Shown here: piece by piece, positions 24,627-54,367 of the stretch
Numbering within the stretch: the first letter of the stretch is position 1
How the letters are laid out: each line of letters opens with the position of its first letter
Virus record (IMG/VR): IMGVR_UViG_3300046516_001816
Span: 124,001-188,000 of that record
Length of the DNA: 64,000 nt
Direction: 5' to 3' (one strand)
Made by a program: the position numbers and the translations under genes
The notes under the pieces: model-generated
What the model was told of the DNA's origin: nothing
Databases searched by the model: none
The model's input: only the letters and a program-made list of their open reading frames with translations

Positions 24627-25886
24627 ATGTCGGACGGACTCGCCGCCCTCACCCAGAACTTACAAGCCGACATGCTGTCGGTGGCCGACTCAGCCTCTAA
24701 AGCGGAGACGAGTGCCAAGGACGCTGTGGCCAGCCAGGAGGCCGCGTACGCCGCTGCGCAAAGCGCCAGTACCAGTGCCGCCGGTGTCACCCAAGCGGCT
24801 GCTAGCAGCCTTACCAACGCGAACCAGGCCCAGTATTGGGCGGGCGTCGCTCAAGCCGTCAATGCGATCAAGGCCAGCTTCGATCCGGTGAGCCGCAGTG
24901 TGCTGATTGCCCTCTCTAATGCGAATCTCACAGCCCGATTTCCAGTGGGGCAAGCTGGCATTCTGGGCAATGTCGGACACGGTGCGGGACAGCATTATTT
25001 CGAAGTCACCTTTGTGTCGGGCAGCGCGAGCAGTAACTGTTCGATTGGGGTGGCGCCGAAAAAGCAAGACCTCAACAGTCAGATTGGCTACAACGACAAT
25101 AGCTCGGGCTCGATTGCAGCCTTCCAGAATTCCGGCAACATTTATAGCAGCGCCTCTAAGCTAGCGACCACGGATAGTTTCGGCACGGCCGGTGCGGTGG
25201 TGGGTGTCGCGGTGGATTCGGATAAGAACCTGGTCTGGATTCGCGTGAATAACGGACACTGGAATGGCAATCCGAGTGCGGATCCGGTCGAAGGGGTGGT
25301 GGGTTTGCCGATTCGCTTTACGGGCGCTGTGTACCCGGCGATGGCCACCGACGTGGTCTCGACGTATACCGCGAACTTCAACGGTCCGTTTGCCAACACC
25401 ATTCCTACGGGCTACAACGCCTGGGGGGCGGACGCGTTTCAGTATGTCGTACCGCTCGCGACCAAAGACACGCCGGGGGTGGCGTCCTTTGGTGAAGGCC
25501 TGGCGGTCGATGCGCAAGGTAATGTGACGGCCAGTGTCTATTACGATCTGGCCACCACGCAAGGCTGGGACACGATGACACTCGATCTCAGCACCCCGCA
25601 GCCGCTCTATCACCTGGTGCTGAATGCGACACAAGCGTCGTTGGCCTTTGCGAATCTGAATCTGCCCGCGGGTAAGGCGCTGCGCTTTACGCTCTACGTC
25701 GAACAGGGCACGGGGGCGAATACGATCACCCAGTGGGACAGCCGGATTCAGTGGTGCACGGGCTCGGGTCAGGCTCCGGTGCTGGCGTTTGCCAAGGGCG
25801 CACGCAATGTGTTTGAATTTGAAACCATCGACGGCGTAAGCTTCGCGGGCTACTACGTCGGTCAACTGAACGCGAGCGGTGCGTAA
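24627..25886 (+). CDS. Fibre protein: short Ala/Ser shaft + SPRY/B30.2-like domain + C-terminal fibre-tip domain
   Basis: GQHYFEV...CSIGVA...VVGVAVDSDKNLVWIRVNNG.W (SPRY); TLDLS...FTLYVEQGTGANTITQWDS.IQW (common phage tip domain). Confidence 0.75.
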   Translation: MSDGLAALTQNLQADMLSVADSASKAETSAKDAVASQEAAYAAAQSASTSAAGVTQAAASSLTNANQAQYWAGVAQAVNAIKASFDPVSRSVLIALSNANLTARFPVGQAGILGNVGHGAGQHYFEVTFVSGSASSNCSIGVAPKKQDLNSQIGYNDNSSGSIAAFQNSGNIYSSASKLATTDSFGTAGAVVGVAVDSDKNLVWIRVNNGHWNGNPSADPVEGVVGLPIRFTGAVYPAMATDVVSTYTANFNGPFANTIPTGYNAWGADAFQYVVPLATKDTPGVASFGEGLAVDAQGNVTASVYYDLATTQGWDTMTLDLSTPQPLYHLVLNATQASLAFANLNLPAGKALRFTLYVEQGTGANTITQWDSRIQWCTGSGQAPVLAFAKGARNVFEFETIDGVSFAGYYVGQLNASGA

Positions 25887-25895
25887 GGAGTCAGT

Positions 25896-28640
25896 ATGTT
25901 ATCGAGTCTTCGCGTAGGACATAGTAGCGAACAACAAAACGCGCTCTCGATCATCCACGGGTTTAATAACTTTCTCGAACGCAAGACCGGGGACGTGGAT
26001 GACAATGGCGACAACGTGGTAGGGGCATTTGTCATCAATAACGAAGGCATGCTCTGCAACAACTTGCACTTCGAAGGCGGTCCGCAAGACTATACGCCCA
26101 CGCAGTGCTCGACCACCGAAGGGCAGTCGCTGTTGATCCTGGGTTACTACTATCTGTGGAAGGGCACGGGCAATCCGGTGTGGCTGCAAAAAGCCGAGCA
26201 GTACTTTGACTGTTATGTGAGGTACTTCTATGGCACCGCGCCCGTTCCCAACCCGCCCGCGATCTATCGCGCCAACTGGATTATGAACGGCAAGAATCCG
26301 TTTATGGTCTATGGTCCGCCCAATCCGCTCAGCGCGCAAAGCCCCGGCTTCTATGGCGAGCCGATTCAGTTCACCAATGGCGTGGGGGTGATTCCGGCCG
26401 GTGGGACGACCTTTGGCGACAAGCTGGTGAAGGTGTATCAGATCTTTACTGGGAAGTTTGCCTACGACTCCGTGCGTGCCGGTCCGGCCCATGGGGGCAC
26501 GTCCTATACGTTCCAGTCGTTTATGGCGACCAACGGAGCGTGGGATAAGAAGTACAACAGCACGACGATGTCAGCGAACACGGCGGTTGGGACCATCATC
26601 CTGGATGACACGTCCTTCACCGGTACGCTGTCGGTGAGTTACGTCATCGAGTCCGCCAATATCATCGGGCGCAACCAGCCGTTTGACGTCTGGCCGACCT
26701 GGCGTACCCTCCAACCCGACGAGTTGGGTAACGCCATTGATGCCGAGCAGTGGTTCACCGAAGCCGCGTTGTTGCTGTATAAGGCAACGGGCAATCCGCT
26801 GTATAACCAGATCTATCAGTGCGGGCTGCTGACCTGTCTGGATGCGACGGTGGTGGATGACGTGACGTATTACTTCCAGAAAGAAGCGACGTCGGTGGAT
26901 CCGTGTGACTACGGTATCTCCTACTGGTGGAACTATACGCCGACCAATAGCATCGCAACCATCAGTCGGAATGCGGACGGCTATATCGTTGCCACCAAGA
27001 CAGCGGAGACGGGGGATCACCTCGGGACCTTTGCGCTGGAACAGATTGCGGTGTTCAACCAGATTGGCCCGAACACGTCCATCAACAATACGTTCTCGAT
27101 TGATAGCCCGACAGCCCGGATTGACTTCTACACGTATATCCAGTCGGCCGTCGATGCGCCCACTGGGGTGAAGTATCGCTACTCGTTGCCGCAAGGGAAC
27201 TGGAGCCAGATGCAGACGGTGAACGTACCCTTTAACAAGATGATTGCCACGACTAAAGCGGATGGGTCGGAGCTCATTATGTTGGATGGGGCGAACTTTG
27301 CGACCTGGGGCACGGCGACCGCTGTGAGTACCTACGAGACGTTTACGCTTAATGGTCAGGTCTACTCGGACTATGTCTGTACGGCCACGTGTCCGGATAA
27401 TAACTCGGGACTCGCCGCTGGGTTCTGGTTGTTGCAGACCACGACCCAGTCGATTGCCCCGCTCACCTACAAGTCCATCTCCGGCACGATGTATGTGGTG
27501 TTGAAAGACGCGCTGGGCGTGAACTACTGGTATGCGTTGCCGCACGCCGATGACTGGACTACGATCAATCTGACCTGGGATATGTTTACGCTGGTGCCCT
27601 ATCAGAGCGGTACGCCTTCGCCGACGCCGACCCCGCAAGCGGCGATGACGCAGATTGAGTTCGAGACCAATAACAGTGCGGCGACCATCCAGACGTATTG
27701 TTGGGGCGCTGTTCCCACGGTCTATCATCCGAATGGCGAGTGGTCCACGCAGTGGTTCTTGCATGCAAGCGACAGTTCAGCGTTCACTTGGTTGGTCGGG
27801 GATGTGGTGATTCAGAATCAGGCGAATCAACCGTTTAAGTATACGCCGGGCGTGGTGCCGTTTTCCAATCAGTATTCGCCGTCCTTGCGTCGTAATGAGT
27901 TCTGGCGCGGCACGCCCTATTCGGGGTATCAGTATCCGGTGAACTGGCTGTATGCGACGCTGCCCGACTATTACGAGAACGTGATTCAGTTCTACTGGGA
28001 CTGTCAGCAGGCGTATCGCAACGAGATCGGGGTGTTGGGTCCGTTCATGCCGGCTTACGTCTGGCCACGGTATGACAACCTAGGGGAAGGACCGATTGAA
28101 AGCTTTGCGTTTGGCTCCGATCAACCCCAACCCTGGGCGGGCTATGAGCCACGCGGTTTCTTCTCCGCGTGTCATTTGTGGGCCGAGCTGGTGCGCCAGC
28201 ATAAGCCCGTCAATCCGAAGCTCGTCCAAGTCTGTCAGAACTACGCCGGGTATCTGTTGCAATTCCAGAAGACACACAACGGGTTGACGCCGTCGGTGTT
28301 TCCCCGGACTGCACCGCCGTATAACGACGGTTGGGATGCCGACCCCGAGCAAAGCAATCCGGACCACGTCGGACATATGACAGGGCTCTGGTTGGCAGGC
28401 TGTGTGGAGATGTTGAATGCGGGGGACAAGAGCGGCATTCCGCAGAAGGTCATCAAGTACTTGCTGCAAGAGCTCGAGAATACCTACGTGATTCGCAGTG
28501 ACGCCGAGTCGGACATGAATGGCTCGTTTTCACCTTGGGCAGGCGGCCGGATGTTCTACGGCTTCTGGGCAGGGGAGATCTTCCGGGGGTTGGGACTGTA
28601 CCTCGAATGGCTGAACAAAGGCAACAGTATTAACGCTTAA
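25896..28640 (+). CDS. Virion-associated glycoside hydrolase, GH8-like (alpha/alpha)6 barrel with inserted beta domains
   Basis: STTEGQSLLILGY (cf. GH8 TSEGQSY) and GNAIDAEQWFTEAALLL (cf. N.ASDGD.W.A..LL). Confidence 0.6.
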   Translation: MLSSLRVGHSSEQQNALSIIHGFNNFLERKTGDVDDNGDNVVGAFVINNEGMLCNNLHFEGGPQDYTPTQCSTTEGQSLLILGYYYLWKGTGNPVWLQKAEQYFDCYVRYFYGTAPVPNPPAIYRANWIMNGKNPFMVYGPPNPLSAQSPGFYGEPIQFTNGVGVIPAGGTTFGDKLVKVYQIFTGKFAYDSVRAGPAHGGTSYTFQSFMATNGAWDKKYNSTTMSANTAVGTIILDDTSFTGTLSVSYVIESANIIGRNQPFDVWPTWRTLQPDELGNAIDAEQWFTEAALLLYKATGNPLYNQIYQCGLLTCLDATVVDDVTYYFQKEATSVDPCDYGISYWWNYTPTNSIATISRNADGYIVATKTAETGDHLGTFALEQIAVFNQIGPNTSINNTFSIDSPTARIDFYTYIQSAVDAPTGVKYRYSLPQGNWSQMQTVNVPFNKMIATTKADGSELIMLDGANFATWGTATAVSTYETFTLNGQVYSDYVCTATCPDNNSGLAAGFWLLQTTTQSIAPLTYKSISGTMYVVLKDALGVNYWYALPHADDWTTINLTWDMFTLVPYQSGTPSPTPTPQAAMTQIEFETNNSAATIQTYCWGAVPTVYHPNGEWSTQWFLHASDSSAFTWLVGDVVIQNQANQPFKYTPGVVPFSNQYSPSLRRNEFWRGTPYSGYQYPVNWLYATLPDYYENVIQFYWDCQQAYRNEIGVLGPFMPAYVWPRYDNLGEGPIESFAFGSDQPQPWAGYEPRGFFSACHLWAELVRQHKPVNPKLVQVCQNYAGYLLQFQKTHNGLTPSVFPRTAPPYNDGWDADPEQSNPDHVGHMTGLWLAGCVEMLNAGDKSGIPQKVIKYLLQELENTYVIRSDAESDMNGSFSPWAGGRMFYGFWAGEIFRGLGLYLEWLNKGNSINA

Positions 28641-28731: not shown

Positions 28732-30348
28732 ATGTCAGACGGTACTACTCCTGGCTCGGATGGGATCAGCGCAGCCGCCACCGCGTTGGCTCAAGAAATG
28801 TCGAATTCCTTGTCGGAGTTCATCGATGGCGTGGTAGCCAACGTCAATCAAGACACGATCGCCAATGCGCAAGCCAGTGCGGCCGCGGCCGCTGCGTCCG
28901 CGACGGCTGCTGCCTCATCCGCCTCTCAGGCTTCTCAAGCGTCGACGACGTCGGCGGCTAACTCCGGTTCCTCGGGTCAAAGCGCGACCTGGGCATCCCA
29001 ATCCGCGACGGCTGCGGCGGCTGCCGCGGCTGAATCCCTGGCTGCCCAACAAGCGGCCAATCAAAGCTACGCCAACACGCAAGCGGCACTCGCTGCCTTT
29101 CAAGCGACGGCCACCGCGTTGACGGGTTTCATGACCACGTACAAGACGTACTTCCTGGGGGCGGGCGCGGCTGACCCCACGCAAGACGGCAATGGCAACT
29201 CGCTGCGCGAAGGGGCCATGTACGAGAACACAACGAGCCACAAAATCCGGGTCTACTCGGGCACCCAGTGGAACGATATCGACTACACGATCCAGGCTCA
29301 ACTCGCTGCCGCTACGGCGTCCGCTACGGCGGCTGCGAGCTCCGCCACTGCCGCCGCGGGTTCCGCGACGGCCGCCGGTGCTTCGGCGACGTTGTCCCAG
29401 AACTGGGCCTCGCAAGCCTCGGGCGTAGTGAACGGTACGAGCTCGCTCTCGGCTAAGCAATACGCCGGTAATGCGGCGACCTCGGCGACCAACGCGGCAT
29501 CGTCCGCGACCGCAGCGGCTGCTTCCGCGACGGCCGCGGCAGGCTCGGCCACGCAAGCGCAAACGTCGGCTGCCACCGCGACCTCCCAAGCCACCTCGGC
29601 GTCGGGTTCGGCTACCGCTGCTTCGGGTTCCGCTACAGCGGCATCCACGTCGGCGGGTAACGCATCCACGTCGGCCACGGCGGCTAGTACTTCGGCAACC
29701 AACGCAGCCAATAGTGCCACGGCCGCCGCGGGTTCGGCGACGGCGGCTGCGACGTCGGCTACAAATGCGTCGAACAGTGCAGCGAGCATCGGCGCGTTCG
29801 GTGTGCTCTCAGGCATCGTGTCAGTGACCAACAACAAGAACCTGACGAGTGCGGACTACGGGAAGATGTACGAGATCCCGTCGGGCTCGGCAGGCGGCTA
29901 CTCGATTGCCGCGCCTGCGGTGGTCGCAGGCGACACCGGTAAATGCTTCGGGATCTGCAACCGCTCCACGGGTGCGGTCACAGTCACGACGGGGGCGAAG
30001 TTCTTCAGCTCCTACGGCTCGAACGTAGCAACGGTGACGATCCCGCCGAATTCGACGGTGATCTTCCAGCAAGACGGTACGAACTTCAACGGCATTGCAG
30101 GCTCGGGGGCCATCGGTAGCACCCTGGTGCCGACCAACGCAGCCCAACCGGGTCAATGGGAGGCGCTCGCGCCGACGGGTCCGGCAGGGGGTGCGACGTT
30201 TGTGTTGCCGGGGGACGCTACGCAACAATGGGCCTACTTCGTGGCCAATGGTTCGCAGCAAGCCGCAGGCGTGGGTGCGGGTGGTTCGGGCGTGTTGGGT
30301 CCGTTCACGTCCAGCAATCCGGTGGGGTTCTGCTGGCGCATCGGTTAA
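28732..30348 (+). CDS. Tail-fibre protein with Stf-like Ala/Ser/Thr coiled-coil shaft, one knob domain and a C-terminal tip
   Basis: SATAAAG heptads; FLGAGAADPTQD...GAMYENT knob; ATG 28732 after AAGGG. Confidence 0.85.
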   Translation: MSDGTTPGSDGISAAATALAQEMSNSLSEFIDGVVANVNQDTIANAQASAAAAAASATAAASSASQASQASTTSAANSGSSGQSATWASQSATAAAAAAAESLAAQQAANQSYANTQAALAAFQATATALTGFMTTYKTYFLGAGAADPTQDGNGNSLREGAMYENTTSHKIRVYSGTQWNDIDYTIQAQLAAATASATAAASSATAAAGSATAAGASATLSQNWASQASGVVNGTSSLSAKQYAGNAATSATNAASSATAAAASATAAAGSATQAQTSAATATSQATSASGSATAASGSATAASTSAGNASTSATAASTSATNAANSATAAAGSATAAATSATNASNSAASIGAFGVLSGIVSVTNNKNLTSADYGKMYEIPSGSAGGYSIAAPAVVAGDTGKCFGICNRSTGAVTVTTGAKFFSSYGSNVATVTIPPNSTVIFQQDGTNFNGIAGSGAIGSTLVPTNAAQPGQWEALAPTGPAGGATFVLPGDATQQWAYFVANGSQQAAGVGAGGSGVLGPFTSSNPVGFCWRIG

Positions 30349-30411: not shown

Positions 30412-31431
30412 ATGGCGGACGGAACGAATCCCGATACCGTACTTACGACCGCGGATTTCTTAGCGGATGTGGCGGCGGTGGCACGACAGTCAGGCTGGGC
30501 AGACCAGTGTGCGACGTCAGCCGCAGCGTCGGCGGCGCAAGCTGAGCTGATTCTCGAACAGATTCTGGGATTGGTGGGCAGTGGTGAGAACTCGGGTCTT
30601 TTGGCCCAGATTCAAGAGGTGGCAAATTCGGCCAGTCAGGCGGCCGCGTCAGCGAGCGCTGCGGCAGCCAGTGCTGCGGCGGCGGCCGCCAGTGTAACCA
30701 GTGCAGCTGCTAAGGTGGGCGATGCCAGCACTCAGGCGAGTAATGCGTCGACGTCTGCAAATGCTGCCGCGGCTTCAGCAACAGCAGCAGCCAACAGTGC
30801 GACTCAAGCAGCAGCGTCCGCCACCGCGGCCAGTGCAGCTTCAGGGTCGGCTACCAGTGCGTCGAACTTTGCGACTGCTGCACAAGCGTCGGCTACAGCA
30901 GCGAACAATTCTGCGACCGCAGCGGCGTCGAGTGCTGCGCAAGCGCAAACCAGCGCCACAGCAGCCCAGACACAAGCTTCGGCTTCTCAGACCAGCGCCA
31001 CGGCCTCCGCAGGCTCCGCGTCGGCGGCCGCGGCTTCGGCGAGTCAGGCCTCGACGGCTGCGGCATCTATTGCGGGTGTCGGACTGAAGTATTTGATCAC
31101 GGCGACCTTGACGGGTACGCTGTCCGCCTCGGAAATCATTCCGTGTCCCGTGACAGTGGCGATTACCTTACCGACGAATCTGTCGGGCTCGCAATTCACG
31201 GCGATCAATAGTGCCACCGCAGCGGTGATTCTGACGCTCTTCCATAACTCGGGGGGCACGTCAACCCCGATTGGGACGGTGACGTTTGCTGCTGGGGCGA
31301 CCAACGGTACCGTGACCTTCACGAATCCCGTGGTCTTTGCCGCCGGCGACTTGCTGGTGATCACGACCCCGAGCACGGCCGATTCGACTTTGGCAAATAT
31401 TGCCATTGGGATTGTCGGCTCGGTGAACTAA
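30412..31431 (+). CDS. Fibre shaft protein with C-terminal adaptor domain (cassette A)
   Basis: Ala/Ser/Thr heptads; C-terminal ...IGTVTFAAGATNGTV...VFAAGDLLVI matches the end of 48296-54367. Confidence 0.85.
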   Translation: MADGTNPDTVLTTADFLADVAAVARQSGWADQCATSAAASAAQAELILEQILGLVGSGENSGLLAQIQEVANSASQAAASASAAAASAAAAAASVTSAAAKVGDASTQASNASTSANAAAASATAAANSATQAAASATAASAASGSATSASNFATAAQASATAANNSATAAASSAAQAQTSATAAQTQASASQTSATASAGSASAAAASASQASTAAASIAGVGLKYLITATLTGTLSASEIIPCPVTVAITLPTNLSGSQFTAINSATAAVILTLFHNSGGTSTPIGTVTFAAGATNGTVTFTNPVVFAAGDLLVITTPSTADSTLANIAIGIVGSVN

Positions 31432-31441: not shown

Positions 31442-32542
31442 ATGGCTTTGTTGTTTTGTGACGGGTTTGATATTTACACCAAAGTCTCGGAGCTCACGGG
31501 TAAGGGCTGGCAGGGCGCGGCGGGCAGCCAGACACTCAATGCGAGTATTGCCCTGTCTGCTTCAGGCAGTCCCTACGGTGGACAATGCATTATCATCGGT
31601 CCCACCGCGAACGGGGTATCGATGTATAAACCCGGGGTGTTTACCTATGCCAATGGCTATACCTTGAACTGTGCGTATATGTACAAGCACACGGGTGGAT
31701 TCCCGAGTCAAAATGAGGGCTCGACGAACGTGGGGGGTTTGCTGCTGCTCGGCTACGATCAGCCCATCGCTGGGCAGTCCGATAGTCGCACGCTGCTCAG
31801 TGTGAATACCACAGGCAAGTTGACCTTTATGCCTTTCGGCGGCAATACGCTGAATGCGACCACGGGCAATATCAATCTTTGCGATGGCGTGTATCACTGG
31901 ATTGAAATGCAGGTGGTACTCACTACTGCGGCGACAGGTTCGGTTAAAGTGTATGTAGATGGGGTATTGGATTTAAACCTCACGAATCTTATCACCGTCA
32001 GCTCCGGCACACCGCAGGGTGAAGTAGGCTTTGGTAGCACGTCCAATAACGGAGCGTTTAGCGTCACGGATTATTACGATGATGTGGTGATGTGGGACAA
32101 TACCGGCACAACGTTCAATACCTTTCCCATTGGTCCGCAACGCATCTATACAGCCACACCCAATGCCGCTGGTGCGCTGTCGCAGTTTACCCCGAGCGCA
32201 GGGGCGAACTACGCGGTGGCTGCGCAGGCGTATTCGGGCGCGGCGTATTTGACAGCCACGGCTGCTGGGCAATCCGATCTGTATGCGACGACCGGACTCG
32301 GGGGCGCGACACCCTCGCAGATTAACGCGGTGGCGGTGAACACCTATGCCAATAATCCGGCAGCGGGATTTCGTAAGCTTCAGAATCTACTGCAATCGAA
32401 GGGCGTCACGGTCTCCGGTCCTTCTTATCAGCTCACTGCCAGCAGTGTGGGCTATCAGACGATTTTTCACACCGATAGCAGCGGCGCGGCGTGGACCACC
32501 ACCACGGTGGCGGGCATGCAGGTGGGCGTGGGAGCAGTGTAA
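31442..32542 (+). CDS. Lectin-like (LamG/ConA-like + jelly-roll) virion head protein (cassette A)
   Basis: N-terminal LFCDGFD; HWIEMQV...VKVYVDG...YYDDVVMWD; C-terminal GAAWT motif; paralog of 54380-62366. Confidence 0.7.
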   Translation: MALLFCDGFDIYTKVSELTGKGWQGAAGSQTLNASIALSASGSPYGGQCIIIGPTANGVSMYKPGVFTYANGYTLNCAYMYKHTGGFPSQNEGSTNVGGLLLLGYDQPIAGQSDSRTLLSVNTTGKLTFMPFGGNTLNATTGNINLCDGVYHWIEMQVVLTTAATGSVKVYVDGVLDLNLTNLITVSSGTPQGEVGFGSTSNNGAFSVTDYYDDVVMWDNTGTTFNTFPIGPQRIYTATPNAAGALSQFTPSAGANYAVAAQAYSGAAYLTATAAGQSDLYATTGLGGATPSQINAVAVNTYANNPAAGFRKLQNLLQSKGVTVSGPSYQLTASSVGYQTIFHTDSSGAAWTTTTVAGMQVGVGAV

Positions 32543-32826: not shown

Positions 32827-32985
32827 ATGGTTCTTCTACTGGATGCCCACATGCGCCCTATAAAGTCTCTGGCAACTCTGATGAAACTCATTCGAGAACA
32901 ACAACAAAGACTCTATGGACAGCAGCCTCGCGTGCCGGAGCTGCTCAAGCCGCAAGCACCACCCGACAAGGATAAAGGGAAATGA
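32827..32985 (+). CDS. 52-aa hypothetical protein (not in ORF track)
   Basis: Hand translation MVLLLDAHMRPIKSLATLMKLIREQQQRLYGQQPRVPELLKPQAPPDKDKGK*; ATGA overlap with 32982. Confidence 0.55.
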   Translation: MVLLLDAHMRPIKSLATLMKLIREQQQRLYGQQPRVPELLKPQAPPDKDKGK

Positions 32986-35512: not shown

Positions 35513-35514
35513 TC

Positions 35515-47053: not shown

Positions 47054-48207
47054 TGGCCACAGTTGCACAGATGTTAGCTCGTGTCATTGACCTCTTTGGT
47101 CCTGCGGGTACAGCAGACCCCACGAAGCTCTATGGCCGTTTGATGGTCAGCCCCAACGGGAATGTCTTGGTTGGTAAGACGACCGATGACGCTACCCATG
47201 ACTTCCAGGTTCAGGGCAATAGTCAATTTACCGGTACCCTGGGGGTCAGTGGCAATGTCACCCTGAGTGCTACTGCTCAGCGAATCACGGGCGACTACAG
47301 TAATGGCACCCTGGCTAGTCGCGTGCTGTTTCAAACATCCGCGGCCAATAGCAATACGTCCGTGGGTGCAGTGCCCAGCGGCTCAGGCACCGGGGGGAAC
47401 TTCACCATTTTCTCTACGCCTGATCCGACTAATTCGTCGTATTGTCAGATCGGGGTGACCGCAGGGGGATGGGCTTCACTGGTGGCCGGTGCGGCGGGCA
47501 CCGGTACACTTTTGCCGCTTTCGTTTAATACCGGCGGCGCATTACGCTGGCAGATCACCACGTCGGGTCAGTTTATGTACACCACCACCGCGGCGGGTTT
47601 GGGTGGGTATGTCAACGCCCTCTGGCAGATCAATACTACCAATAACACGGTGCGTGGCTGCGTGCAAGGTCACGCCAACGGTCAGGGCTACGGCATTGTG
47701 TTTGTGAATGGTAATGAGCAAGCCACGACCACCCAGGCCTGTGTGTTTGTTAATACCAGTGGCTCGGCGGTGGGTTCTATCACTGCCAGTACCTCCGCCA
47801 CGGCGTTTAACACGACTTCAGACTACCGCCTCAAAGACAATGTGGTGAAGTTGGATCGCGCGCTGGATACGGTGATGAAGCTGCGACCCGTGCGCTACAC
47901 GTTTAACCATGTGCCGAAGGAAGATCGTCATCTCGTGCATGAGGGTTTTATCGCGCACGAGTTGCAGGAATATGTCCCTCACGCCGTGCACGGCAAGAAG
48001 GACGAAGTCTGGCATAACCTCAAGCTGCGGAAAGGCCACGATCCGAAGAACATCAAGCATGAGGATGTGCTCGACGTCGAAGAGGAAATGGTCATCCAGC
48101 AAGTGGACTATTCCAAGGTGGTGCCACTACTGACCGCAGCGTTGCAAGAAGCGATCACGGAAATTCAATCACTGAAGGAACGTGTCGCTGAGTTGGAAGC
48201 GAAGTAA
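47053..48207 (+). CDS. Tail-fibre tip/spike protein with peptidase S74 chaperone
   Basis: SD AAGGAGG, TAATG coupling; N-terminus like 45632; TSDYRLKDNV...GFIAHELQE.VP. Confidence 0.88.
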   Translation: MATVAQMLARVIDLFGPAGTADPTKLYGRLMVSPNGNVLVGKTTDDATHDFQVQGNSQFTGTLGVSGNVTLSATAQRITGDYSNGTLASRVLFQTSAANSNTSVGAVPSGSGTGGNFTIFSTPDPTNSSYCQIGVTAGGWASLVAGAAGTGTLLPLSFNTGGALRWQITTSGQFMYTTTAAGLGGYVNALWQINTTNNTVRGCVQGHANGQGYGIVFVNGNEQATTTQACVFVNTSGSAVGSITASTSATAFNTTSDYRLKDNVVKLDRALDTVMKLRPVRYTFNHVPKEDRHLVHEGFIAHELQEYVPHAVHGKKDEVWHNLKLRKGHDPKNIKHEDVLDVEEEMVIQQVDYSKVVPLLTAALQEAITEIQSLKERVAELEAK

Positions 48208-48295: not shown

Positions 48296-51200
48296 ATGAC
48301 CGGCAATGTAGATCATCTTACTCACCTCAAGGGTGAAGTGGAACAGCTGGTAGATACGGTGGATGGTCTGGGGGTTGCGTTTAACTTGGCCACGGGTGGA
48401 GACATTGCTGTCTATGCCCAGCAAGCACTCGCAAATGCCGGTCAGGCTCAGACGGCATCAGCAGCCGCGTCCCAGTCCGCTACTACAGCTACTGCCGCTG
48501 CCACACAAACGGCACAAGACGTGATCAACGCCAATGCGGCGGCGACACAGGCCGCGGCTTCCGCAGGCAATGCCGCACAGTCGGCATCGACCGCGGTATC
48601 AGCACAACTCTCGGCGAGCTCCAGCGCAAGCGCAGCATCCAACTCGGCCATTGCCGCGGCGAACTCGGCTTCGACCATGGCCGCATCAGTAACCGCCGCA
48701 GGCAACAGCGCAGCGGCTGCTCACACCAGCGAAACCAATGCCGCGACTTCGGCTAGCGCTGCGCAGTCATCCGCAGCTCAGGTTACGGCGCTGTATAACG
48801 CCTGGGGTCAAGTCTTCCTGGGTGAATTCCCGTCAGATCCCACGCTGGATAATCAAGGCAATGCGCTCATCGATGGCGCGATGTATTTGAACACCACCGA
48901 AGTCCCGCCTGCGATCCGAATCTATACGGCGGGTAAGTGGCAGGACATGGATGAACAGGGCGTGCTGGCATCACAAGCCGCGCAGACTTCGGCTCAGCAA
49001 GCCGCCACGTCGTCCAGTGCAGCCCAGACCTTTGCCGGTACCGCAGCCACCAACGCGGCGGCTGCTAGCACGTCAGCTAATGCAGCAGCGACTTCGGCTA
49101 CGACAGCGTCTGATCTTGCCGGACAAGCAGCGACGTCCGCGACCAATGCGTCTGATTCGGAAATCGCGGCCGCGTCCAGCGCTACGGAAGCAGATGCAGC
49201 GGCAGCGTTGGCGCAAGACTGGGCTTCTAAGTCAGACGGTACGGTGGGTGGGACGGAATTCTTTTCGGCTGCTCACTATGCGCAGGAGGCGGATGCAGCG
49301 AACACCGCGGTGCAAAGCTCGATCTCCAATGCAGCTGCTTTGGGTGGAGCAGCTGCTACGTCGGCCACGCAAGCTGCATCCAGTGCAACTGCGGCTGCTA
49401 CGTCGGCTTCGCAGGCTTCGGGTTCGGCGACAGCCGCCGGTGTCAGTGCAGGTAATGCTGCTAACAGCGCTGCGGCGGCGCAGGCTTCTCAATCGGCAGC
49501 CGCGACCAGTGAAACCAATGCAGCGACGAGTGCGACGCATGCGGCTACCTCCGAAACGAATGCTGCGGCCAGTGCAACGTCGGCCAGTGCAGCGGACACG
49601 GATGCCAAAGCGCAAGCGACCAGTGCCACGACGGCTGCGCAATTGGCAGAAGACTGGGCGACGAAGACGAGTGCCACAGTAGACGGGGTGGAGTATTCGG
49701 CCAAGTACTACGCGAACCAAGCTGTAGCAGCAGACACGGATGCTCAGGCAAAGGCTGCTACGGCTGCAACGTCAGCGACCACCGCTACGACACAAGCCAC
49801 CAATGCTACCAGCAGCGCCACCTTGGCTCAGCAATGGGCAACGAGTGCAACGCTGGTGGCATCGACTGATTATTCGGCGAAGTATTACGCCAATGCAGCA
49901 GGTTCGTCGGCGACTGCCGCTGCAAACAGTGCGTCCTCGATTGCCGCGACGGCCACGGCTGTTGCAGCGAATGCCGCGCTGGCCGCCGCGTGGGCGTCGC
50001 AAGAATCGGGTACGGTGAATGGGACCACGTATTACTCGGCACTGTACTACGCGCTTCAAGCAGCGAATGCCGATACGGATGCTCAAACGCAGGCCACCAA
50101 TGCAGCGACGAGTGCTACGGCAGCTGCCTCCAGCGCTACAAATGCCGCAACATCGGCAAGCAGTCTTCAAAGTGCACTGGCTTCGTTTAGTGCATTGTTC
50201 CTGGGCCCTCATTCCACTCCGCCGACCGTAGACAACCAAGGCAACCCGTTGATCACCGGTGCGCAGTACATGGATTCGTCACAGAGTCCGCCGGTACTGA
50301 ATGAATGGACGGGCTCGGCTTGGGTGGCTGTCTCCAACGATGCTTCGGGCAACGCTCAACTTGCGGCGACTCAAGCGCAGGCGGCAGCGACTTCGGCATC
50401 AGGGAGTGCATCGGCGGCTTCGACGAGCGAATCGAATGCAAGTACTTCCGCCACTAATGCAGCAAATTCTGCAACTGCTGCTGCATCTTCCGCTTCTGCC
50501 AGTGCTGGTAGTGCTACTGCTGCTCAAACGGCTGCTAGCGCCGCACAAGCCGCTGACACGGATGCGACAACGCAAGCAACTAATGCGGGAGCATCTGCAA
50601 CAAGCGCAGCAGGCAGTGCAAGTGCAGCAGGAACTTCAGCAGGTCAGGCAACTGATGCAGCAGCACTTGCTCAAGCTTGGGCAAGCCAGGCAAGCGGAAA
50701 TGTAAACGGTACCGCGTTTGCGTCGGCATTGCAGTATGCGCAACAGGCTTCTAGCTCGGCCACCAGTGCGAGCACGGCAGTAACGCAGTCGCAAGCCAAT
50801 GCAACCCTGGCTCAATCGTGGGCCTCGCAGACCTCGGGTAAGGTCAATAGCAGCAACTATTACTCGGCGTATTACTACGCGACGCAGGCCGCGACGAGTG
50901 CTACTGCCGCTGGCACGAGTGCGACCACAGCTAGCACCGCAGCCACCTCCGCTACAGCGAGTCAAACCGCTGCGGCGACGTCCGCCACCAACGCCGCAGG
51001 CAGCGCGACGACGGCACAAACCGCCGCCACGACGGCGACGAATCAAGCAGCAGCAGCGAGTGCTTCGGCAAGTGCAGCAGCTGCTAGTGATACGGATGCG
51101 ACCACTCAGGCGAGTAATGCAGCAGCCTCGGCAACCACGGCCAGTAATGCCGCGACAACCGCCAGCGCTGCGGCGACCACCGCTACCACACAGGCGACTG

Positions 51201-54200
51201 CTGCGGCACAATCGGCAACGCAAGCAGCAGCATCGGCTACGGCCGCAGCGAGCTCAGCTACCAGTGCAGCATCGAGTGCCACCGCGGCAGCTGCGTCGGC
51301 GACAACGGCTAGCACTCAGGCAGGGAATGCCTCGACCTCGGCAACGAACGCAGCGAATTCTGCTGCTTCTATTCTGGGGCAGACGGGCACGAACCTCGCA
51401 CAAGTGCAAGCCATTCAGGCGCAGTTGAATGCAGCACTGGCGAGTTTTGGTTCCGTGTGGCTGGGTCAGCAAACCAGCGATCCGACGGTGGACTTGAACC
51501 ATCAGCCGATTGCCAATGGAGCGATGTACCAAAATACGTCGACCACGCCACCGGTGATTCGGATCTATGAAGGGGGAGTGTGGCAGGATTGGGATTTGCA
51601 AGGCGAGCAGGCGATGGCCAATGCAACCCTGGCGGCTTCCCAAGCTGCGCAGTCGGCGACCGCTTCGGCCACCAGTGCCCAGACATCGGCCACGGCTGCC
51701 AACACGGCCCTGACGGCGATGAATGCGGCACAGGCAGCCCAGACGGCTGCGCAAAGTGCAGACAGCGACGCAACGACTCAGGCCACCGCAGCAGCCGGGT
51801 CTGCCACCGCAGCAGATGGTTCGGCGCAGCAGGCAGAGTACTTCATGAACCAGGCGATTGCTTGGGCGACCTCGGATAGTGCCAACATTAACTTTTCGAA
51901 TCGGGGTTCGGCGTATTACTACGCGAGCGTAGCGTATAACTACTACGTCGCGATTCAGAACCTGAATTCGAGTGCAGGGACGAGTGCGACCAACGCGGCG
52001 AATAGTGCTAGCGCCGCAGCCGCTTCGTTGTCGTCGATTAACACGCAGTTGTCGCAGTCGGCAGCGAGTGCAACGGCCGCCGCCGCGTCGGCAGCGGATG
52101 CTGCGTCGAGTGCAGGTAACGCCAGCGCATCGGCTTCTGCTTCGGCCAATAGTGCAGCTACGTCGGCTACGCAGTCGTCTAATGCGTCCACGGCAGCGGC
52201 GAATGCCAACAACTCTGCGAATCAAGCGGCCACGAGTGCAACAGCGTCTGCACAATCAGCCACCGATGCGTCGACCTCTGCGTCTCAGGCAGCGGCTTAC
52301 CTGAACGACGTGACGAACCACACGGGTGATGCGTCTCAGTATTCGGCGCTGGCTCAGTCGTGGGCGTCGCAAGGCAGCGGCACGGTAGACGGGACCAGTT
52401 ACTCGGCCTACTACTATGCCAATCAAGCGGGCGTGTCGGCGACGAACGCAGGCAATAGTGCAGCAGGGGCCAGTAGCAGTGCGACTGCGGCAGCGGGCTC
52501 GGAAACGAACTCGGCAGCGTCAGCTGCGTTGGCACAGGCTTGGGCTAGCCAAGGTTCGGGCGTGGTCAATGGGACGAGTAGTTATTCGGCCTTCTACTAC
52601 GCTCAAGCGGCGGCGACGTCAGCGACCAGTGCAGCGAACGCTGTCACCACGGGTAGTCAGTATGTGACGTTGGCAGCTTCATGGGCTTCGCAAGCGACGG
52701 GTAATGTGGATGGTTCGCAATACAAGTCCGCCTTCCAGTACGCTACGCTGGCAGCCGCTTCGCAGCAGACGGCGAGCACCGCAGCGACGAATGCAGCCGG
52801 TAGCGCCACAGCTGCCGCTAGCAGTGCCACCGCAGCGGCCGGTTCGGCGAGTTCAGCAGCGACGTCGCTGGCCAGTCTCCAGGCAGCGTATGCGTCCTTT
52901 ACCAGCACTTGGTTGGGACCGTACAGCACGCCGCCTACCCAGACACCGACGGGTGGGGTGTTGACGATTGGTGCGCAGTACGAAGACACCAGTCAGACTC
53001 CGCCGGTAGTGATGACGTGGGATGGGTCGGTATGGAATCCGCCGAGTGCTGCGGATGCGAGTGCCTCGGCGAACGTCACGTTGGCCGCGGCTCAAGCGCA
53101 GTCTGCCGCAGGTACAGCCGCGACGTCCGCTTCGAATGCGTCGAGCTCAGAAACCAATGCCGCAGCTTCGGCGTCGGCCGCAGCTGCGTCGGCTTCGGCA
53201 GCTGATGCATCCAACACGGCGACCACTGCCAATGCCGCGTTGGCCCAAGCGTGGGCGAGCCAAACGTCTGGGAAAGTGAATGGTACGCAGTCGTATTCCG
53301 CGTACTACTACATGCTTCAGGCGCAGTCAGCTCTGAATAGTGTCCAGGCCTCGCAGACGGACGTGGATGCCAAACAAACGCAGGCAGACGCGAGTGCGTC
53401 CCTTGCCATGGCGTGGGCGTCGCAAAGCACGGGCGTGGTGAACAATACGCAGTACTATTCGGCGTATTACTACGCACAGCAGGCGCTGTCGGCTAACACC
53501 TCGGCTCAGTCAGCGCTGACGACGATTCAAGCAGCAGTGGCGCAGGCTCAAACTGCGGCCACCCAAGCGACCAATCTCGTGTCAGGCCCGAGCGGGTCGG
53601 CTAACTACTACTCGACGCAAGCGGCGAACTCCGCCACGACCGCGAGTACGGCAGCTACCAATGCACAAACCAGTGCATCGGCTGCGGCGACGTCTGCCGC
53701 GAATGCAGCTGCCGCAGCACAACAGGTGTTGACTAATTCGAATGCAGCCAGTACCAGTGCAACGAATGCGTCGAACAGTGCAACTGCTGCGGCAGGTAGT
53801 GCCACAGCTGCGCAGGGGAGCGCCACGGCAGCGAATACGTCAAAGACTAATGCAGCTACGTCAGCGACCGCTGCCGCAGGCAGTGCCAGTGCTGCTGCGG
53901 GGTCCGCCACGCAAGCGGCCAATAGTGCCACGTCCGCTACCAGTAGTGCGACCGCTGCCAGTAGTTCGGCCACGGCAGCGGCCGCCAGTGCCGCTAAGGC
54001 GCTGGTCAACGCGCGGATCTCGTGCTCCGTCACGGGTAATCCGAACGTGTTTCAAGAAGTGAAGTATCCGTTTGCGGGCGACACCTGTACGTTTGATACG
54101 AACTTTGGGCCTTCCGCAGCCATCTGTACGTTTATGGAAGGCACGAGTGCGACGGTGAATGTGTTGGCGTATAACGCGGCTCACCCGACTGGGGTGGTCG

Positions 54201-54367
54201 TGGGCACGCTCACGTTCACGCAAACGACAGGCAATAGCGGCACGGGTGTGTTTAGTTCAGTCTCGAGTACGACGACGGTGTTTAATCCGGGTGACACGAT
54301 TTCGTTGTTGCCGGTGAGCACCAATCTCGCCTCGATGGCTGTGACGTTTAAGGGTAGCTACAGTTAA
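48296..54367 (+). CDS. Very long fibre shaft (2023 aa) with 4 knob domains, 12 WAS..YSA.YYA knuckles and a C-terminal adaptor domain (cassette B)
   Basis: Ala/Ser/Thr heptads throughout; C-terminal VGTLTFTQ...VFNPGDTISL matches the end of 30412. Confidence 0.9.
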   Translation: MTGNVDHLTHLKGEVEQLVDTVDGLGVAFNLATGGDIAVYAQQALANAGQAQTASAAASQSATTATAAATQTAQDVINANAAATQAAASAGNAAQSASTAVSAQLSASSSASAASNSAIAAANSASTMAASVTAAGNSAAAAHTSETNAATSASAAQSSAAQVTALYNAWGQVFLGEFPSDPTLDNQGNALIDGAMYLNTTEVPPAIRIYTAGKWQDMDEQGVLASQAAQTSAQQAATSSSAAQTFAGTAATNAAAASTSANAAATSATTASDLAGQAATSATNASDSEIAAASSATEADAAAALAQDWASKSDGTVGGTEFFSAAHYAQEADAANTAVQSSISNAAALGGAAATSATQAASSATAAATSASQASGSATAAGVSAGNAANSAAAAQASQSAAATSETNAATSATHAATSETNAAASATSASAADTDAKAQATSATTAAQLAEDWATKTSATVDGVEYSAKYYANQAVAADTDAQAKAATAATSATTATTQATNATSSATLAQQWATSATLVASTDYSAKYYANAAGSSATAAANSASSIAATATAVAANAALAAAWASQESGTVNGTTYYSALYYALQAANADTDAQTQATNAATSATAAASSATNAATSASSLQSALASFSALFLGPHSTPPTVDNQGNPLITGAQYMDSSQSPPVLNEWTGSAWVAVSNDASGNAQLAATQAQAAATSASGSASAASTSESNASTSATNAANSATAAASSASASAGSATAAQTAASAAQAADTDATTQATNAGASATSAAGSASAAGTSAGQATDAAALAQAWASQASGNVNGTAFASALQYAQQASSSATSASTAVTQSQANATLAQSWASQTSGKVNSSNYYSAYYYATQAATSATAAGTSATTASTAATSATASQTAAATSATNAAGSATTAQTAATTATNQAAAASASASAAAASDTDATTQASNAAASATTASNAATTASAAATTATTQATAAAQSATQAAASATAAASSATSAASSATAAAASATTASTQAGNASTSATNAANSAASILGQTGTNLAQVQAIQAQLNAALASFGSVWLGQQTSDPTVDLNHQPIANGAMYQNTSTTPPVIRIYEGGVWQDWDLQGEQAMANATLAASQAAQSATASATSAQTSATAANTALTAMNAAQAAQTAAQSADSDATTQATAAAGSATAADGSAQQAEYFMNQAIAWATSDSANINFSNRGSAYYYASVAYNYYVAIQNLNSSAGTSATNAANSASAAAASLSSINTQLSQSAASATAAAASAADAASSAGNASASASASANSAATSATQSSNASTAAANANNSANQAATSATASAQSATDASTSASQAAAYLNDVTNHTGDASQYSALAQSWASQGSGTVDGTSYSAYYYANQAGVSATNAGNSAAGASSSATAAAGSETNSAASAALAQAWASQGSGVVNGTSSYSAFYYAQAAATSATSAANAVTTGSQYVTLAASWASQATGNVDGSQYKSAFQYATLAAASQQTASTAATNAAGSATAAASSATAAAGSASSAATSLASLQAAYASFTSTWLGPYSTPPTQTPTGGVLTIGAQYEDTSQTPPVVMTWDGSVWNPPSAADASASANVTLAAAQAQSAAGTAATSASNASSSETNAAASASAAAASASAADASNTATTANAALAQAWASQTSGKVNGTQSYSAYYYMLQAQSALNSVQASQTDVDAKQTQADASASLAMAWASQSTGVVNNTQYYSAYYYAQQALSANTSAQSALTTIQAAVAQAQTAATQATNLVSGPSGSANYYSTQAANSATTASTAATNAQTSASAAATSAANAAAAAQQVLTNSNAASTSATNASNSATAAAGSATAAQGSATAANTSKTNAATSATAAAGSASAAAGSATQAANSATSATSSATAASSSATAAAASAAKALVNARISCSVTGNPNVFQEVKYPFAGDTCTFDTNFGPSAAICTFMEGTSATVNVLAYNAAHPTGVVVGTLTFTQTTGNSGTGVFSSVSSTTTVFNPGDTISLLPVSTNLASMAVTFKGSYS

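What the first reader, a model, noticed from the sequence alone, without database searches (positions are those of the whole stretch)
24627..54367. A bouquet of ten Stf-like fibre shafts of graded length with a related N-terminal anchor helix
Seen: ten genes (24627, 28732, 30412, 32982, 34973, 36207, 36981, 37725, 38986, 48296) contain Ala/Ser/Thr heptad shafts (SATAAAG-SATAAAT-SATNAAN) from ~50 to ~1900 aa, each with its own C-terminal module (SPRY, docking motif, paired beta-sandwiches, ConA-like, S74 fibre, adaptor). Several start with a similar helix: VSALANQISGMATG, VTTLANEIASLAGG, ISDLANEISSMAPG, more weakly LSLLLDSISGLTGA and VEQLVDTVDGLGVA. Known: lambda Stf has similar SASAA..TSETNA coiled-coil shafts. 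Inference: many different fibres plug into a common hub and reach different distances; at ~0.15 nm per residue the longest could approach ~280 nm. This fits a 'hairy' virion.
Basis: partly seen in the sequence, partly recalled or inferred. Interest (0 to 1): 0.65.

Follow-up and report, generated by a model that had tools for sequence, protein, structure and literature searches.

The report
Coiled-coil fibre island in jumbo phage
An uncultivated phiKZ-like giant phage carries a 38-kb block of genes for about ten thin coiled-coil fibres of very different lengths with different binding tips, but only three of them share a real common N-terminal piece, so the single "common hub" idea is only partly supported.

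Summary
All ten ORFs exist on the + strand. Eight carry strong Ala/Ser/Thr heptads (lag-7 identity about 0.5 against 0.2 background) and two carry only about 40 residues of them. No other gene in the 285-kb genome has such a shaft. Shaft spans run from about 40 to about 1870 residues.

C-terminal modules differ:
- SPRY and Peptidase_S74 are confirmed by Pfam.
- 36207 and 36981 share a jelly-roll tip.
- 37725 is lectin/ConA-like at lead level only.

The 34973 "docking motif" is the best-supported point. Its last 13 residues, in three copies, are predicted to clamp the three GGxW repeats of the next gene's ILEI-domain tip (ipSAE 0.74, best control 0.13). This gene pair and its 2-nt junction recur in five phages.

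The N-terminal "anchor" is significant for only three genes (34973, 36207, 37725). It forms a 38-residue module, conserved in three related metagenomic contigs, that stays constant while tips are swapped. The giants and 36981 do not join it in profile searches.

The genome is a phiKZ-like IMG/VR virus record. Seven cultured relatives lack these shafts. Virion location is untested. I rate it a new variant of a known kind.

The parts
24584..24591 (+). GC hairpin followed by TTTATGCC, 43 nt upstream of 24627. It is one of six such elements in the island; the others start at 28668, 32804, 34931, 38919 and 48233. Candidate terminator plus promoter unit.
   Evidence: (family D13). The genome holds 44 copies, mostly 3-110 nt upstream of gene starts.
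24627..25886 (+). Fibre 1, 419 aa: short Stf-like coil (about residues 28-68), SPRY domain (122-242), C-terminal tail-fibre domain (296-412).
   Evidence: Pfam SPRY E 2.3e-8. phrog_10080, and phrog_9017/7760 'tail fiber protein'..
25896..28640 (+). 914-aa tail protein without a shaft (phrog_2871 family). Possible distal partner of fibre 1.
   Evidence: phrog_2871 E 4e-219. About 32% identity to tail proteins of Rosemountvirus-like Salmonella/Escherichia phages.
28732..30348 (+). Fibre 2, 538 aa: helices, one beta 'knot' (141-180), one W-A motif, heptad shaft to about 358, beta C-terminal domain.
   Evidence: AF2 secondary structure from a low-confidence model. Ortholog in L033 at 64% identity.
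30412..31431 (+). Fibre 3, 339 aa: shaft about 65-226, C-terminal domain of phrog_7049 (tail fiber protein).
31442..32542 (+). 366-aa phrog_2448 protein. A short paralog of the C-terminal part of the three ~755-aa proteins further downstream.
   Evidence: phrog_2448 E 2e-26, full length.
32982..33716 (+). Fibre 4, 244 aa: about 40-residue Ala/Ser/Gln coil and a unique C-terminal domain.
   Evidence: Orthologs in L033 (60%) and L034.
33719..34905 (+). Two conserved accessory genes: 33719-34471 (phrog_1348 'tail fiber protein') and 34462-34905. Candidate assembly or adaptor factors.
   Evidence: Conserved in L033, L034, L035 and partly in FLC9.
34973..35512 (+). Fibre 5, 179 aa: N-terminal 38-aa module, pure heptad shaft, no tip. 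It ends in the docking strand ...SSAAPSGGNSGDLWYQI.
   Evidence: The C-terminal strand is conserved in FLC9 gp228, L033, L034 and L035.
35515..36195 (+). Separately encoded tip, 226 aa: three N-terminal GGxWxxV repeats plus an ILEI domain. It starts 2 nt after the stop codon of 34973.
   Evidence: Pfam ILEI E 2e-8. phrog_36019 E 1e-60. The junction TAA-TC-ATG type is conserved in five phages. Complex model ipSAE 0.74 against best control 0.13.
36207..36971 (+). Fibre 6, 254 aa: N-terminal module, helix 6-139, jelly-roll tip 144-251.
   Evidence: AF2 mean pLDDT 83. Foldseek matches to GOLD, CBM35, C1q/BclA and lambda gpJ C-terminal folds. Four 254-aa homologs at 54-81% identity.
36981..37715 (+). 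Fibre 7, 244 aa: its own N-terminus, shaft about 22-122, tip paralogous to that of 36207.
37725..38891 (+). Fibre 8, 388 aa: N-terminal module, shaft about 19-163, lectin/ConA-like tip 160-388.
   Evidence: Atlas structure look-alikes are DUF2793 phage fibre tips and legume-lectin-like proteins. The tip is swapped in relatives while the N-terminus is kept.
38986..45579 (+). Giant fibre 9, 2197 aa: shaft about 41-988 with two knots and two W-A motifs, a ~1000-aa beta-rich distal part, and a Peptidase_S74 intramolecular chaperone (2057-2110).
45632..48207 (+). Two short S74-bearing fibre proteins (473 and 384 aa) with a shared N-terminus of their own and no heptad shaft.
   Evidence: Pfam Peptidase_S74 E 8e-10 and 1e-11. 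Many tail-fibre PHROGs.
48296..54367 (+). Giant fibre 10, 2023 aa: shaft about 43-1911 with at least 3 knots caught by the pattern and 9 W-A motifs, plus a small ~120-aa beta C-terminal domain.
   Evidence: The L033 ortholog is 60% identical over the C-terminal half.
54380..62991 (+). Downstream genes without shafts: 373 aa; three ~755-aa paralogs (phrog_30887 + phrog_2448, probably beta-propeller-bearing); 204 aa. Candidate distal partners of fibre 10.
   Evidence: Same gene order in L033.

Best explanation
What it is: window 24.6-63.0 kb is an accessory host-recognition island of a phiKZ-like jumbo phage. It encodes a set of modular fibres.

How each fibre is built: each has a parallel, probably trimeric, alpha-helical coiled coil. 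Its core is made of Ala at the two heptad core positions and its surface is almost charge-free (Ser/Thr/Asn/Gly). The number of heptads sets the reach, from about 6 nm to at most about 280 nm. In the long fibres, small beta 'knots' and W-A motifs interrupt the helix.

How specificity is supplied: either by a variable C-terminal binding module fused to the shaft (SPRY, jelly-roll, lectin-like, or a long beta fibre with an S74 chaperone), or by a separately encoded tip. In the clearest case, the three C-terminal strands of the tipless shaft 34973 each pair with one of the three GGxW repeats at the N-terminus of a single ILEI-domain protein (35515). This would be a trimer-to-monomer joint.

How the fibres attach: three short fibres (34973, 36207, 37725) share a clade-specific 38-residue N-terminal module. 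It is probably their common attachment piece, kept constant while tips are exchanged. The other seven have unrelated N-termini, so they must attach at other sites or onto one another.

Shown: the repeats, the domains, the shared module in three genes, synteny, and the predicted docking.

Inferred: the trimer state, presence in the virion, the point of attachment, and receptor binding.
For: Heptads and Ala core.

Long-helix model with beta-sandwich tip. Jelly-roll matches including C1q/BclA and lambda gpJ.

Tail-fibre PHROG matches. SPRY, S74 and ILEI by Pfam above the curated cut-offs.

Genome identity: phiKZ-like by PHROGs and by 46% identity to Burkholderia phage FLC9 in a core virion protein.

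Docking joint:
- ipSAE 0.74 against a best control of 0.13. This mark was reached by 51 of 78 solved complexes and 2 of 108 mismatched pairs.
- The runs agree in at least 97% of contacts and partner pLDDT is at least 89.
- Residues 167-179 of each shaft copy touch tip residues 1-9, 11-23 and 25-37.
- The pair, the C-terminal strand and the 2-nt junction are conserved in FLC9, L033, L034 and L035, even though FLC9's shaft uses a different repeat.

N-terminal module:
- The strict motif occurs only in three genes.
- jackhmmer converges on 11-12 members in four phages, and a 12-sequence alignment was built.
- At the same locus position the N-terminal 26-37 residues are kept (44-57% identity) while three different tips are used.
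- In 1.84 billion representatives, only this clade shows the module at the N-terminus.

Transcription units: six hairpin + TTTATGCC elements each precede a shaft gene.

Intact orthologs in the same order in three independent metagenomic contigs argue for function.
Against: - There are no virion proteomics, micrographs or expression data. The genome is an uncultivated record, and no sequencing run was listed.
- The trimeric state is inferred, not tested. An all-Ala core is unusual for stable parallel trimers.
- The complex test was calibrated on single-chain pairs, not on a 3:1 assembly, and shows confidence rather than binding.
- The N-terminal module is not more conserved between orthologs than the rest of the protein, so shared ancestry by duplication could explain it without an anchoring role.
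- The AF2 model of 28732 is of low confidence (mean pLDDT 49), so the nature of the knots is only tentatively beta.
- The island is not next to the phiKZ-type baseplate fibre paralogs, which lie at genome 265-273 kb.
Confidence: 0.6

Rival explanations
1. One reading: all ten fibres plug into one common hub through a related N-terminal anchor helix and radiate as a bouquet.
For: - All ten start with a short helix-prone segment directly followed by the shaft, with no globular N-terminal domain.
- A hand-made loose pattern matches six of them at residues 11-16 and nothing else in 379,084 residues of six-frame translation.
- 38986 is the best non-seed N-terminus against the three-gene profile (rank 4 of 563 scored N-termini).
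- 38986 aligns collinearly with 37725 from residue 4 (E 2e-4).
Against: - The loose pattern was written from the sequences it then finds, so the test is circular.
- Profile and iterative searches do not link 38986, 48296 or 36981 to the module; the 38986 match scores only 4.0 bits (E 2.2).
- Even the L033 ortholog of 48296 has a diverged N-terminus that jackhmmer does not find.
- The six-sequence profile fails on FLC9's fibres.
- Four genes have a different M-S-D-G type start.
Confidence: 0.12
2. A branched composite: the two giant fibres are stalks, and the short fibres and tip proteins attach along or at the end of them (for example at the knots or the small C-terminal domain of 48296). This would resemble the hyperbranched fibres of RaK2/phiKp24 or the multi-part T4 long fibre, rather than ten independent fibres.
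For: - One joint between separately encoded parts is already supported.
- The giants carry seven or more knots in all.
- 48296 ends in a small domain and is followed by five shaft-less genes in conserved order.
- 38986 is followed by two short S74 fibres with a shared N-terminus of their own.
- Branched fibres are known in jumbo phages (PMC13282480).
Against: - No T4 gp10-like branching domain was seen in the Pfam or PHROG hits.
- hhalign between the C-termini of 30412 and 48296 is inconclusive (probability 25%).
Confidence: 0.2
3. The fibres are hairs on the capsid or along the tail sheath, as in the 'hairy Myoviridae' or the head fibres of PTm1. They would mediate loose, reversible adhesion rather than acting as baseplate receptor-binding fibres.
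For: - The island lies far from the phiKZ-type baseplate fibre paralogs.
- The fibres lack conventional N-terminal baseplate-attachment domains.
- Hair-like appendages are documented in other jumbo phages (PMC6143709; PMC13282480).
- The ILEI tip has weak relatives in Y3/AD1-type hairy phages.
Against: - The genome is phiKZ-like, not of the Y3/Lu11 or Rak2 lineages.
- The hair proteins of those phages were not identified in the passages I read.
- 38986 resembles long tail fibres with an S74 chaperone.
Confidence: 0.15
4. Most of the genes are not virion parts. They would be a reservoir of cassettes for recombination, or non-structural secreted or adhesive proteins.
For: Repetitive shafts could serve as recombination substrates. 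Tips are exchanged between relatives.
Against: - DNA copies of the repeat are only 60-76% identical, with no long identical tracts.
- Every gene is intact and closely spaced after the preceding gene or element; six promoter-like elements each precede a shaft gene.
- Orthologs stay intact and in the same order in three other contigs.
- Homology is to virion fibre families.
Confidence: 0.05

Closest known systems
Lambda side tail fibre Stf (orf-401/orf-314) and P2 gpH-type fibres
   Same: Both have an Ala-rich 7-residue repeat with Ser/Thr/Asn around an Ala core. In lambda orf-401 residues 116-387, lag-7 identity is 0.32 against 0.16. Both have a variable distal tip.
   Different: - Lambda's shaft is 18% charged, while these shafts are 0-2.5% charged.
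- Sequence similarity is compositional only (17 bits with bias 122).
- Stf has a ~110-residue N-terminal domain before the shaft, whereas these fibres start the helix at about residue 6-15.
- Here there are ten such genes, with shafts of up to about 1870 residues.
Fibres with a C-terminal intramolecular chaperone (Peptidase_S74; endosialidase and T5 pb1 type)
   Same: 38986, 45632 and 47053 carry the S74 domain above Pfam's cut-off. That 38986 has the layout of a long fibre with a cleavable chaperone rests on my knowledge of the family.
   Different: Here the S74 fibre is preceded by about 950 residues of Ala-core heptads with knots. Self-cleavage was not tested.
T4 long tail fibre joints (gp34 trimer, gp35 monomer, gp36 trimer)
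   Same: A monomeric protein joined to a trimeric fibre segment encoded by the neighbouring gene. The T4 stoichiometry is from my own knowledge. The 3:1 model here is.
   Different: No sequence relation was seen. Here the joint is predicted to be three C-terminal strands of the shaft, each paired with one of three tandem GGxW repeats, and the monomer is the ILEI-domain tip itself.
Multi-fibre systems with a conserved N-terminal anchor and swapped receptor-binding parts (K1-5/SP6, CBA120, RaK2/phiKp24)
   Same: Several receptor-binding proteins in one virion. A constant N-terminus with exchangeable tips, seen here for the 37725-position gene in four phages. Branched fibres in jumbo phages are described in PMC13282480.
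   Different: - The constant part here is only 38 residues of helix-prone sequence, not a folded anchor domain.
- It is shared by three of ten genes.
- It is confined to this clade.
Accessory fibre locus of Burkholderia phage FLC9 (gp228, gp227, gp220, gp218, next to a QueC-like gene)
   Same: Syntenic locus containing:
- the same shaft-dock + ILEI-tip pair;
- a fibre with the 36207-type tip (46% identity);
- a 33719 relative.

   Different: FLC9 has about three short fibres built on an 11-residue SEATTRANADT-type repeat and no Ala-core heptad shafts. The island here is several-fold expanded.

Membership tests
Stf-type Ala-rich heptad fibre shafts | Seven-residue periodicity with small (Ala) residues at the two core positions | tested here: met
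   Lag-7 identity 0.41-0.57. Two near-invariant Ala positions 3/4 apart. The same pattern is present in lambda orf-401.
Stf-type Ala-rich heptad fibre shafts | Detectable sequence homology to lambda Stf | tested here: inconclusive
   phmmer of the 37725 shaft against orf-401 gives 17 bits with bias 122, which is compositional. PHROG tail-fibre families do match the shafts.
Stf-type Ala-rich heptad fibre shafts | Folded N-terminal tail-attachment domain before the shaft | tested here: not met
   The helix starts at residue 6 in the 36207 model. All ten genes go from a short N-terminus straight into the shaft. Lambda has about 110 residues first.
Peptidase_S74 chaperone fibres | S74 domain near the C-terminus | tested here: met
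   38986 residues 2057-2110, E 4.5e-10, 40.1 bits against a cut-off of 22. Also present in 45632 and 47053.
Peptidase_S74 chaperone fibres | Autoproteolytic release of the chaperone after trimer folding | not testable with these tools
   Needs protein expression.
phiKZ-like jumbo phages | Core virion and replication proteins of the group | tested here: met
   phrog_3184, 3430, 3248, 3004, 3222, 3011 and 2163 at E 1e-57 to 0. The best relatives are FLC9, FLC4-3B, RP12 and RSL2.
phiKZ-like jumbo phages | Nucleus shell protein and split multisubunit RNA polymerases | not tested
   Not looked for, because it is outside the question.
'Hairy Myoviridae' (Lu11, CBB, Y3, AD1) | Hair-like appendages seen on particles | not testable with these tools
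   The genome is an uncultivated IMG/VR record.
'Hairy Myoviridae' (Lu11, CBB, Y3, AD1) | Kinship with the Y3/Lu11 or Rak2 lineages | tested here: not met
   The closest relatives are phiKZ-like Burkholderia, Ralstonia and Xanthomonas phages. Only the ILEI tip has weak hits in Y3/AD1-type phages.
Multi-RBP sets with a shared N-terminal anchor | Several receptor-binding proteins of one phage share a conserved N-terminal segment | tested here: inconclusive
   Met for three of ten genes. Not met for the other seven.
Multi-RBP sets with a shared N-terminal anchor | The N-terminus is kept while the C-terminal binding domain is exchanged between relatives | tested here: met
   At the 37725 position in four phages, residues 1-26/37 are 44-57% identical and three unrelated tips are used.
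Two-gene fibre (shaft plus separately encoded tip) | Conserved adjacency and a predicted interface that beats controls | tested here: met
   The pair and its 2-nt junction occur in five phages. ipSAE 0.74 against 0.13.

The most novel reading that the evidence does not exclude
An uncultivated phiKZ-like phage clade has enlarged a small accessory fibre locus into a 38-kb arsenal with three unusual features:
- about ten nearly charge-free, Ala-core coiled-coil fibres that reach from a few nm to more than the tail length;
- a clade-specific 38-residue N-terminal plug that lets tips be swapped on a constant base;
- an undescribed fibre joint in which the three C-terminal strands of a trimeric shaft clamp three tandem GGxW repeats of one ILEI-domain tip.
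Probability: 0.3. Interest if true: 0.65.

Novelty: new variant of a known kind. Interest (0 to 1): 0.5.

Why it matters
- Little is established about how phiKZ-like phages recognise their hosts beyond the baseplate fibres. An island of ten length-graded fibres would give such a phage many receptor options at different distances from the cell.
- The nearly uncharged Ala-core heptad is a minimal and very long coiled-coil design. It would be of interest to structural biologists and protein engineers.
- The 34973-35515 joint and the 38-residue module are concrete, testable handles for swapping tips on phage fibres.
- None of this is shown to be on the virion yet.

Tried and rejected
- Megablast of 22 kb against 50,697 phage records: no match.
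- tblastn of the 34973 shaft and of a knot segment: no match, probably because of the low-complexity filter and the short query.
- Sequence search of solved structures with a short fibre, a shaft segment and the distal part of 38986: nothing useful. The only hits were E 0.037 and 0.0017 to unrelated or marginal chains.
- Profile of the three strong N-termini against the whole genome in six frames: it finds only itself.
- Profile of all six proposed helices against FLC9: the fibres are not among the top hits. I had seen a likeness by eye in FLC9 gp228 and gp220 and dropped it as unsupported.
- jackhmmer from each of the other N-termini (38986, 48296, 36981, 28732, 24627): at most the gene's own ortholog; 48296 and 24627 found none.
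- hhalign of the C-terminal domains of 48296 and 30412: probability 25%, inconclusive.
- AF2 of 28732: mean pLDDT 49. I used it only for secondary structure and did not send it to fold search.
- IMG/VR scan with 36207: one unrelated small phage, whose fibre matched through the shaft only.
- Sequencing runs: none was listed.
- Paper search for the genome length: none found. Paper search for alanine-rich coiled-coil tail fibres: none found.


Full report
**Setting.** The window is bases 124,001-188,000 of a single-contig genome of 284,983 bp with 56.7% G+C. It is held as an IMG/VR virus record that CheckV rates 100% complete. Large genes outside the window match PHROG families typical of phiKZ-like jumbo phages: phrog_3184, 3430, 3248, 3004, 3222, DNA polymerase phrog_3011 and terminase phrog_2. 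Four paralogs of the phrog_2163 fibre/baseplate family lie at genome 265-273 kb. By a 989-aa core virion protein, the nearest held relative is Burkholderia phage FLC9 (46% identity). Ralstonia phages FLC4-3B and RP12 and Xanthomonas phage LucasX follow at about 38%. No nucleotide-level relative exists among 50,697 phage records, and no paper was found for this genome.

**The observation.**
- The repeat is a true heptad. Identity at lags 7, 14 and 21 is 0.41-0.57 against about 0.2 elsewhere.
- Two positions spaced 3 and 4 apart are almost always Ala, and the first is preceded by Ser.
- At the DNA level, copies are spaced by multiples of 21 nt but are only 60-76% identical. There are therefore no recent duplications or long recombination tracts.
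- A strict scan of all 318 called genes finds eight such genes, all in the window.
- 24627 and 32982 carry only about 40 Ala/Ser/Thr-rich residues.
- Shaft spans are about 41, 39, 101, 108, 139, 145, 162, 320, 950 and 1870 residues.
- In the long shafts the helix is interrupted. Conserved ~42-residue 'knots' occur once in 28732, twice in 38986 and at least three times in 48296. W-A...YSA..Y motifs also occur.
- A low-confidence AF2 model of 28732 places short strands at the knot and a loop at the W-A motif.

**What the proteins are.**
- The shafts match many PHROG families annotated as tail fibre proteins. For example, phrog_38058 scores E 1e-48 to 1e-56 on the giants.
- AlphaFold with five homologs models 36207 as one helix from residue 6 to 139 (pLDDT up to 96) followed by a beta-sandwich. 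This sandwich resembles GOLD, CBM35, C1q/BclA and lambda gpJ C-terminal jelly rolls.
- The tip of 36981 is a paralog of the 36207 tip.
- Pfam confirms SPRY in 24627 and Peptidase_S74 in 38986. It also finds S74 in the two shaft-less fibres 45632 and 47053, and ILEI in 35515.
- The tip of 37725 has lectin-like and phage-fibre-tip look-alikes in the ESM Atlas, which is a lead only.
- No other pair of C-terminal modules is similar by BLAST.
- Lambda Stf (orf-401) does have the same kind of heptad. It differs in being 18% charged against 0-2.5% here, in sharing only composition, and in having a ~110-residue N-terminal domain that these fibres lack.

**The N-terminal helix.**
- Three genes (34973, 36207, 37725) share a specific motif found nowhere else in 379,084 residues of six-frame translation, with none expected in shuffles.
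- 34973 and 37725 find each other at E about 2e-3.
- I obtained relatives by searching the tip of 36207. This gave four 254-aa homologs on three metagenomic contigs: L033 (47 kb, JGI), L034 and L035. These carry the same island in the same order at roughly 55-80% identity.
- jackhmmer from the first 34 residues of 34973 was run over all six-frame ORFs of this genome, FLC9 and the three contigs (850,954 residues). It converges on 11-12 sequences, exactly the three orthologous groups. They align as a 38-residue module.
- In 1.84 billion representative proteins, the profile finds the module at the N-terminus only in this clade. The other hits are unrelated repeats.
- At the 37725 position the four phages keep the first 26-37 residues (44-57% identity) but carry three unrelated tips. 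This is what one expects of a constant, virion-proximal piece.
- By contrast, 38986, 48296 and 36981 are not linked to the module by any profile. Among the other N-termini, 38986, 36981 and 28732 find only their own ortholog and 48296 and 24627 find none. A profile of all six proposed helices does not find FLC9's fibres.
- Separately, five of the ten genes begin M-[SA]-D, against three of the other ~308 genes.

**A two-gene fibre.**
- 34973 has no tip and ends in a short strand...SGGNSGDLWYQI. The next gene starts 2 nt after its stop codon and opens with three GGxWxxV repeats before an ILEI domain.
- The same C-terminal strand, the same repeats and the same stop-NN-ATG junction occur in FLC9 (gp228/gp227), L033, L034 and L035. 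This holds although FLC9's shaft is built from a different 11-residue repeat.
- Three copies of residues 125-179 of 34973 were folded with one copy of 35515. The result was ipSAE 0.74, 0.74 and 0.71 against a best control of 0.13. This mark was reached by 51 of 78 solved complexes and 2 of 108 mismatched pairs. The runs agree in at least 97% of contacts and partner pLDDT is at least 89.
- Residues 167-179 of each shaft copy touch tip residues 1-9, 11-23 and 25-37.
- This supports binding but does not prove it. The job also differs from the calibration set, which used single-chain pairs.
- It suggests a trimer-to-monomer joint, and it shows that not all ten genes are stand-alone fibres.

**Organisation.**
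- Six copies of a GC-rich hairpin followed by T[AT]TATGCC lie 23-67 nt upstream of the next called ORF. Five precede a shaft gene directly (24627, 28732, 34973, 38986, 48296). The sixth precedes a 52-aa ORF that abuts 32982.
- The genome holds 44 such elements, mostly just upstream of genes.
- They probably end one transcript and start the next. From memory, phiKZ late promoters carry a TATG motif; this link is an inference.
- The island is preceded by non-structural genes (thymidylate kinase, DHH phosphoesterase, a periplasmic binding protein) and followed by a QueC-like gene.
- FLC9 has a small syntenic version next to its QueC-like gene, with about three short fibres.
- A shaft query that finds 11 places in this genome finds none in FLC9, RSL2, FLC4-3B, RP12, LucasX, RSL1 or RsoM2USA.
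- The Ala-core bouquet is therefore specific to this uncultivated clade among the relatives examined.

**Interpretation.**
- The best reading is an expanded accessory host-recognition island of modular coiled-coil fibres.
- A real common N-terminal piece exists for three short fibres. At least one joint exists between separately encoded parts.
- The single-hub bouquet for all ten is not supported.
- A branched assembly on the giant fibres, or hairs on the capsid or sheath, remain open. Hair-like and branched appendages are documented in other jumbo phages (PMC6143709; PMC13282480).
- Virion presence, oligomeric state and attachment site are inferred, not shown.

**Verdict.** It is a new variant of a known kind, of moderate interest.

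Noticed in passing
window 24584, 28668, 32804, 34931, 38919, 48233, and genome-wide: A GC-rich hairpin, often with a TTCG loop, is followed at once by T[AT]TATGCC. There are 31 copies on the + strand and 13 on the - strand of the genome, mostly 3-110 nt upstream of gene starts. It is a candidate terminator + promoter unit of the phage's own RNA polymerase.
   Followed up: partly
window 21419-22540: A phage-encoded periplasmic binding protein with a signal peptide (Pfam Peripla_BP_6, E 4e-49). The best genome hit is 41% identical to a Quisquiliibacterium (Burkholderiales) MAG, which is a weak hint at the host group. A likely lipoprotein gene follows at 22548-23129.
   Followed up: partly
window 55510-57795, 57810-60071, 60081-62366 (and 31442-32542): Three ~755-aa paralogs (phrog_30887 with a phrog_2448 C-terminal part) and one 366-aa short form. 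Atlas structure look-alikes are BNR/DUF6242 beta-propellers. Homologs occur in Ralstonia phages RSL1 and RsoM2USA and in Burkholderia phages BcepSaruman/Sauron.
   Followed up: partly
window 24627, 28732, 30412, 32982, 38986 (first codons): Five of the ten fibre genes begin M-[SA]-D (MSDG, MADG, MSDT, MSDL), against three of about 308 other genes. The same start is seen in their orthologs in L033-L035. Its meaning is unknown.
   Followed up: partly
window 35510-35517 and the same junction in L015, L033, L034, L035: The stop codon of the shaft gene and the ATG of the tip gene are separated by exactly 2 nt (TAA/TGA, TC or TT, ATG) in all five phages. This suggests translational coupling of the two halves of the fibre.
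   Followed up: partly
L015:13694-15859 (Burkholderia phage FLC9 gp240): A 721-aa protein with a signal peptide, long Ala-rich repeats and a C-terminal end typical of YadA-type trimeric autotransporter adhesins. This is an unusual gene for a phage. The judgement is by eye only.
   Followed up: no
L034:2274-3011 and FLC9 gp226 (L015:20718-21449): A ~245-aa protein with a GHSLGA lipase/esterase-like motif sits inside the fibre locus in two relatives. It is absent at that place in the window.
   Followed up: no
window 63565-64000 (continues beyond the window): A QueC-like gene (phrog_1550) lies directly after the island, 51% identical to FLC9's. It hints at 7-deazaguanine DNA modification.
   Followed up: no
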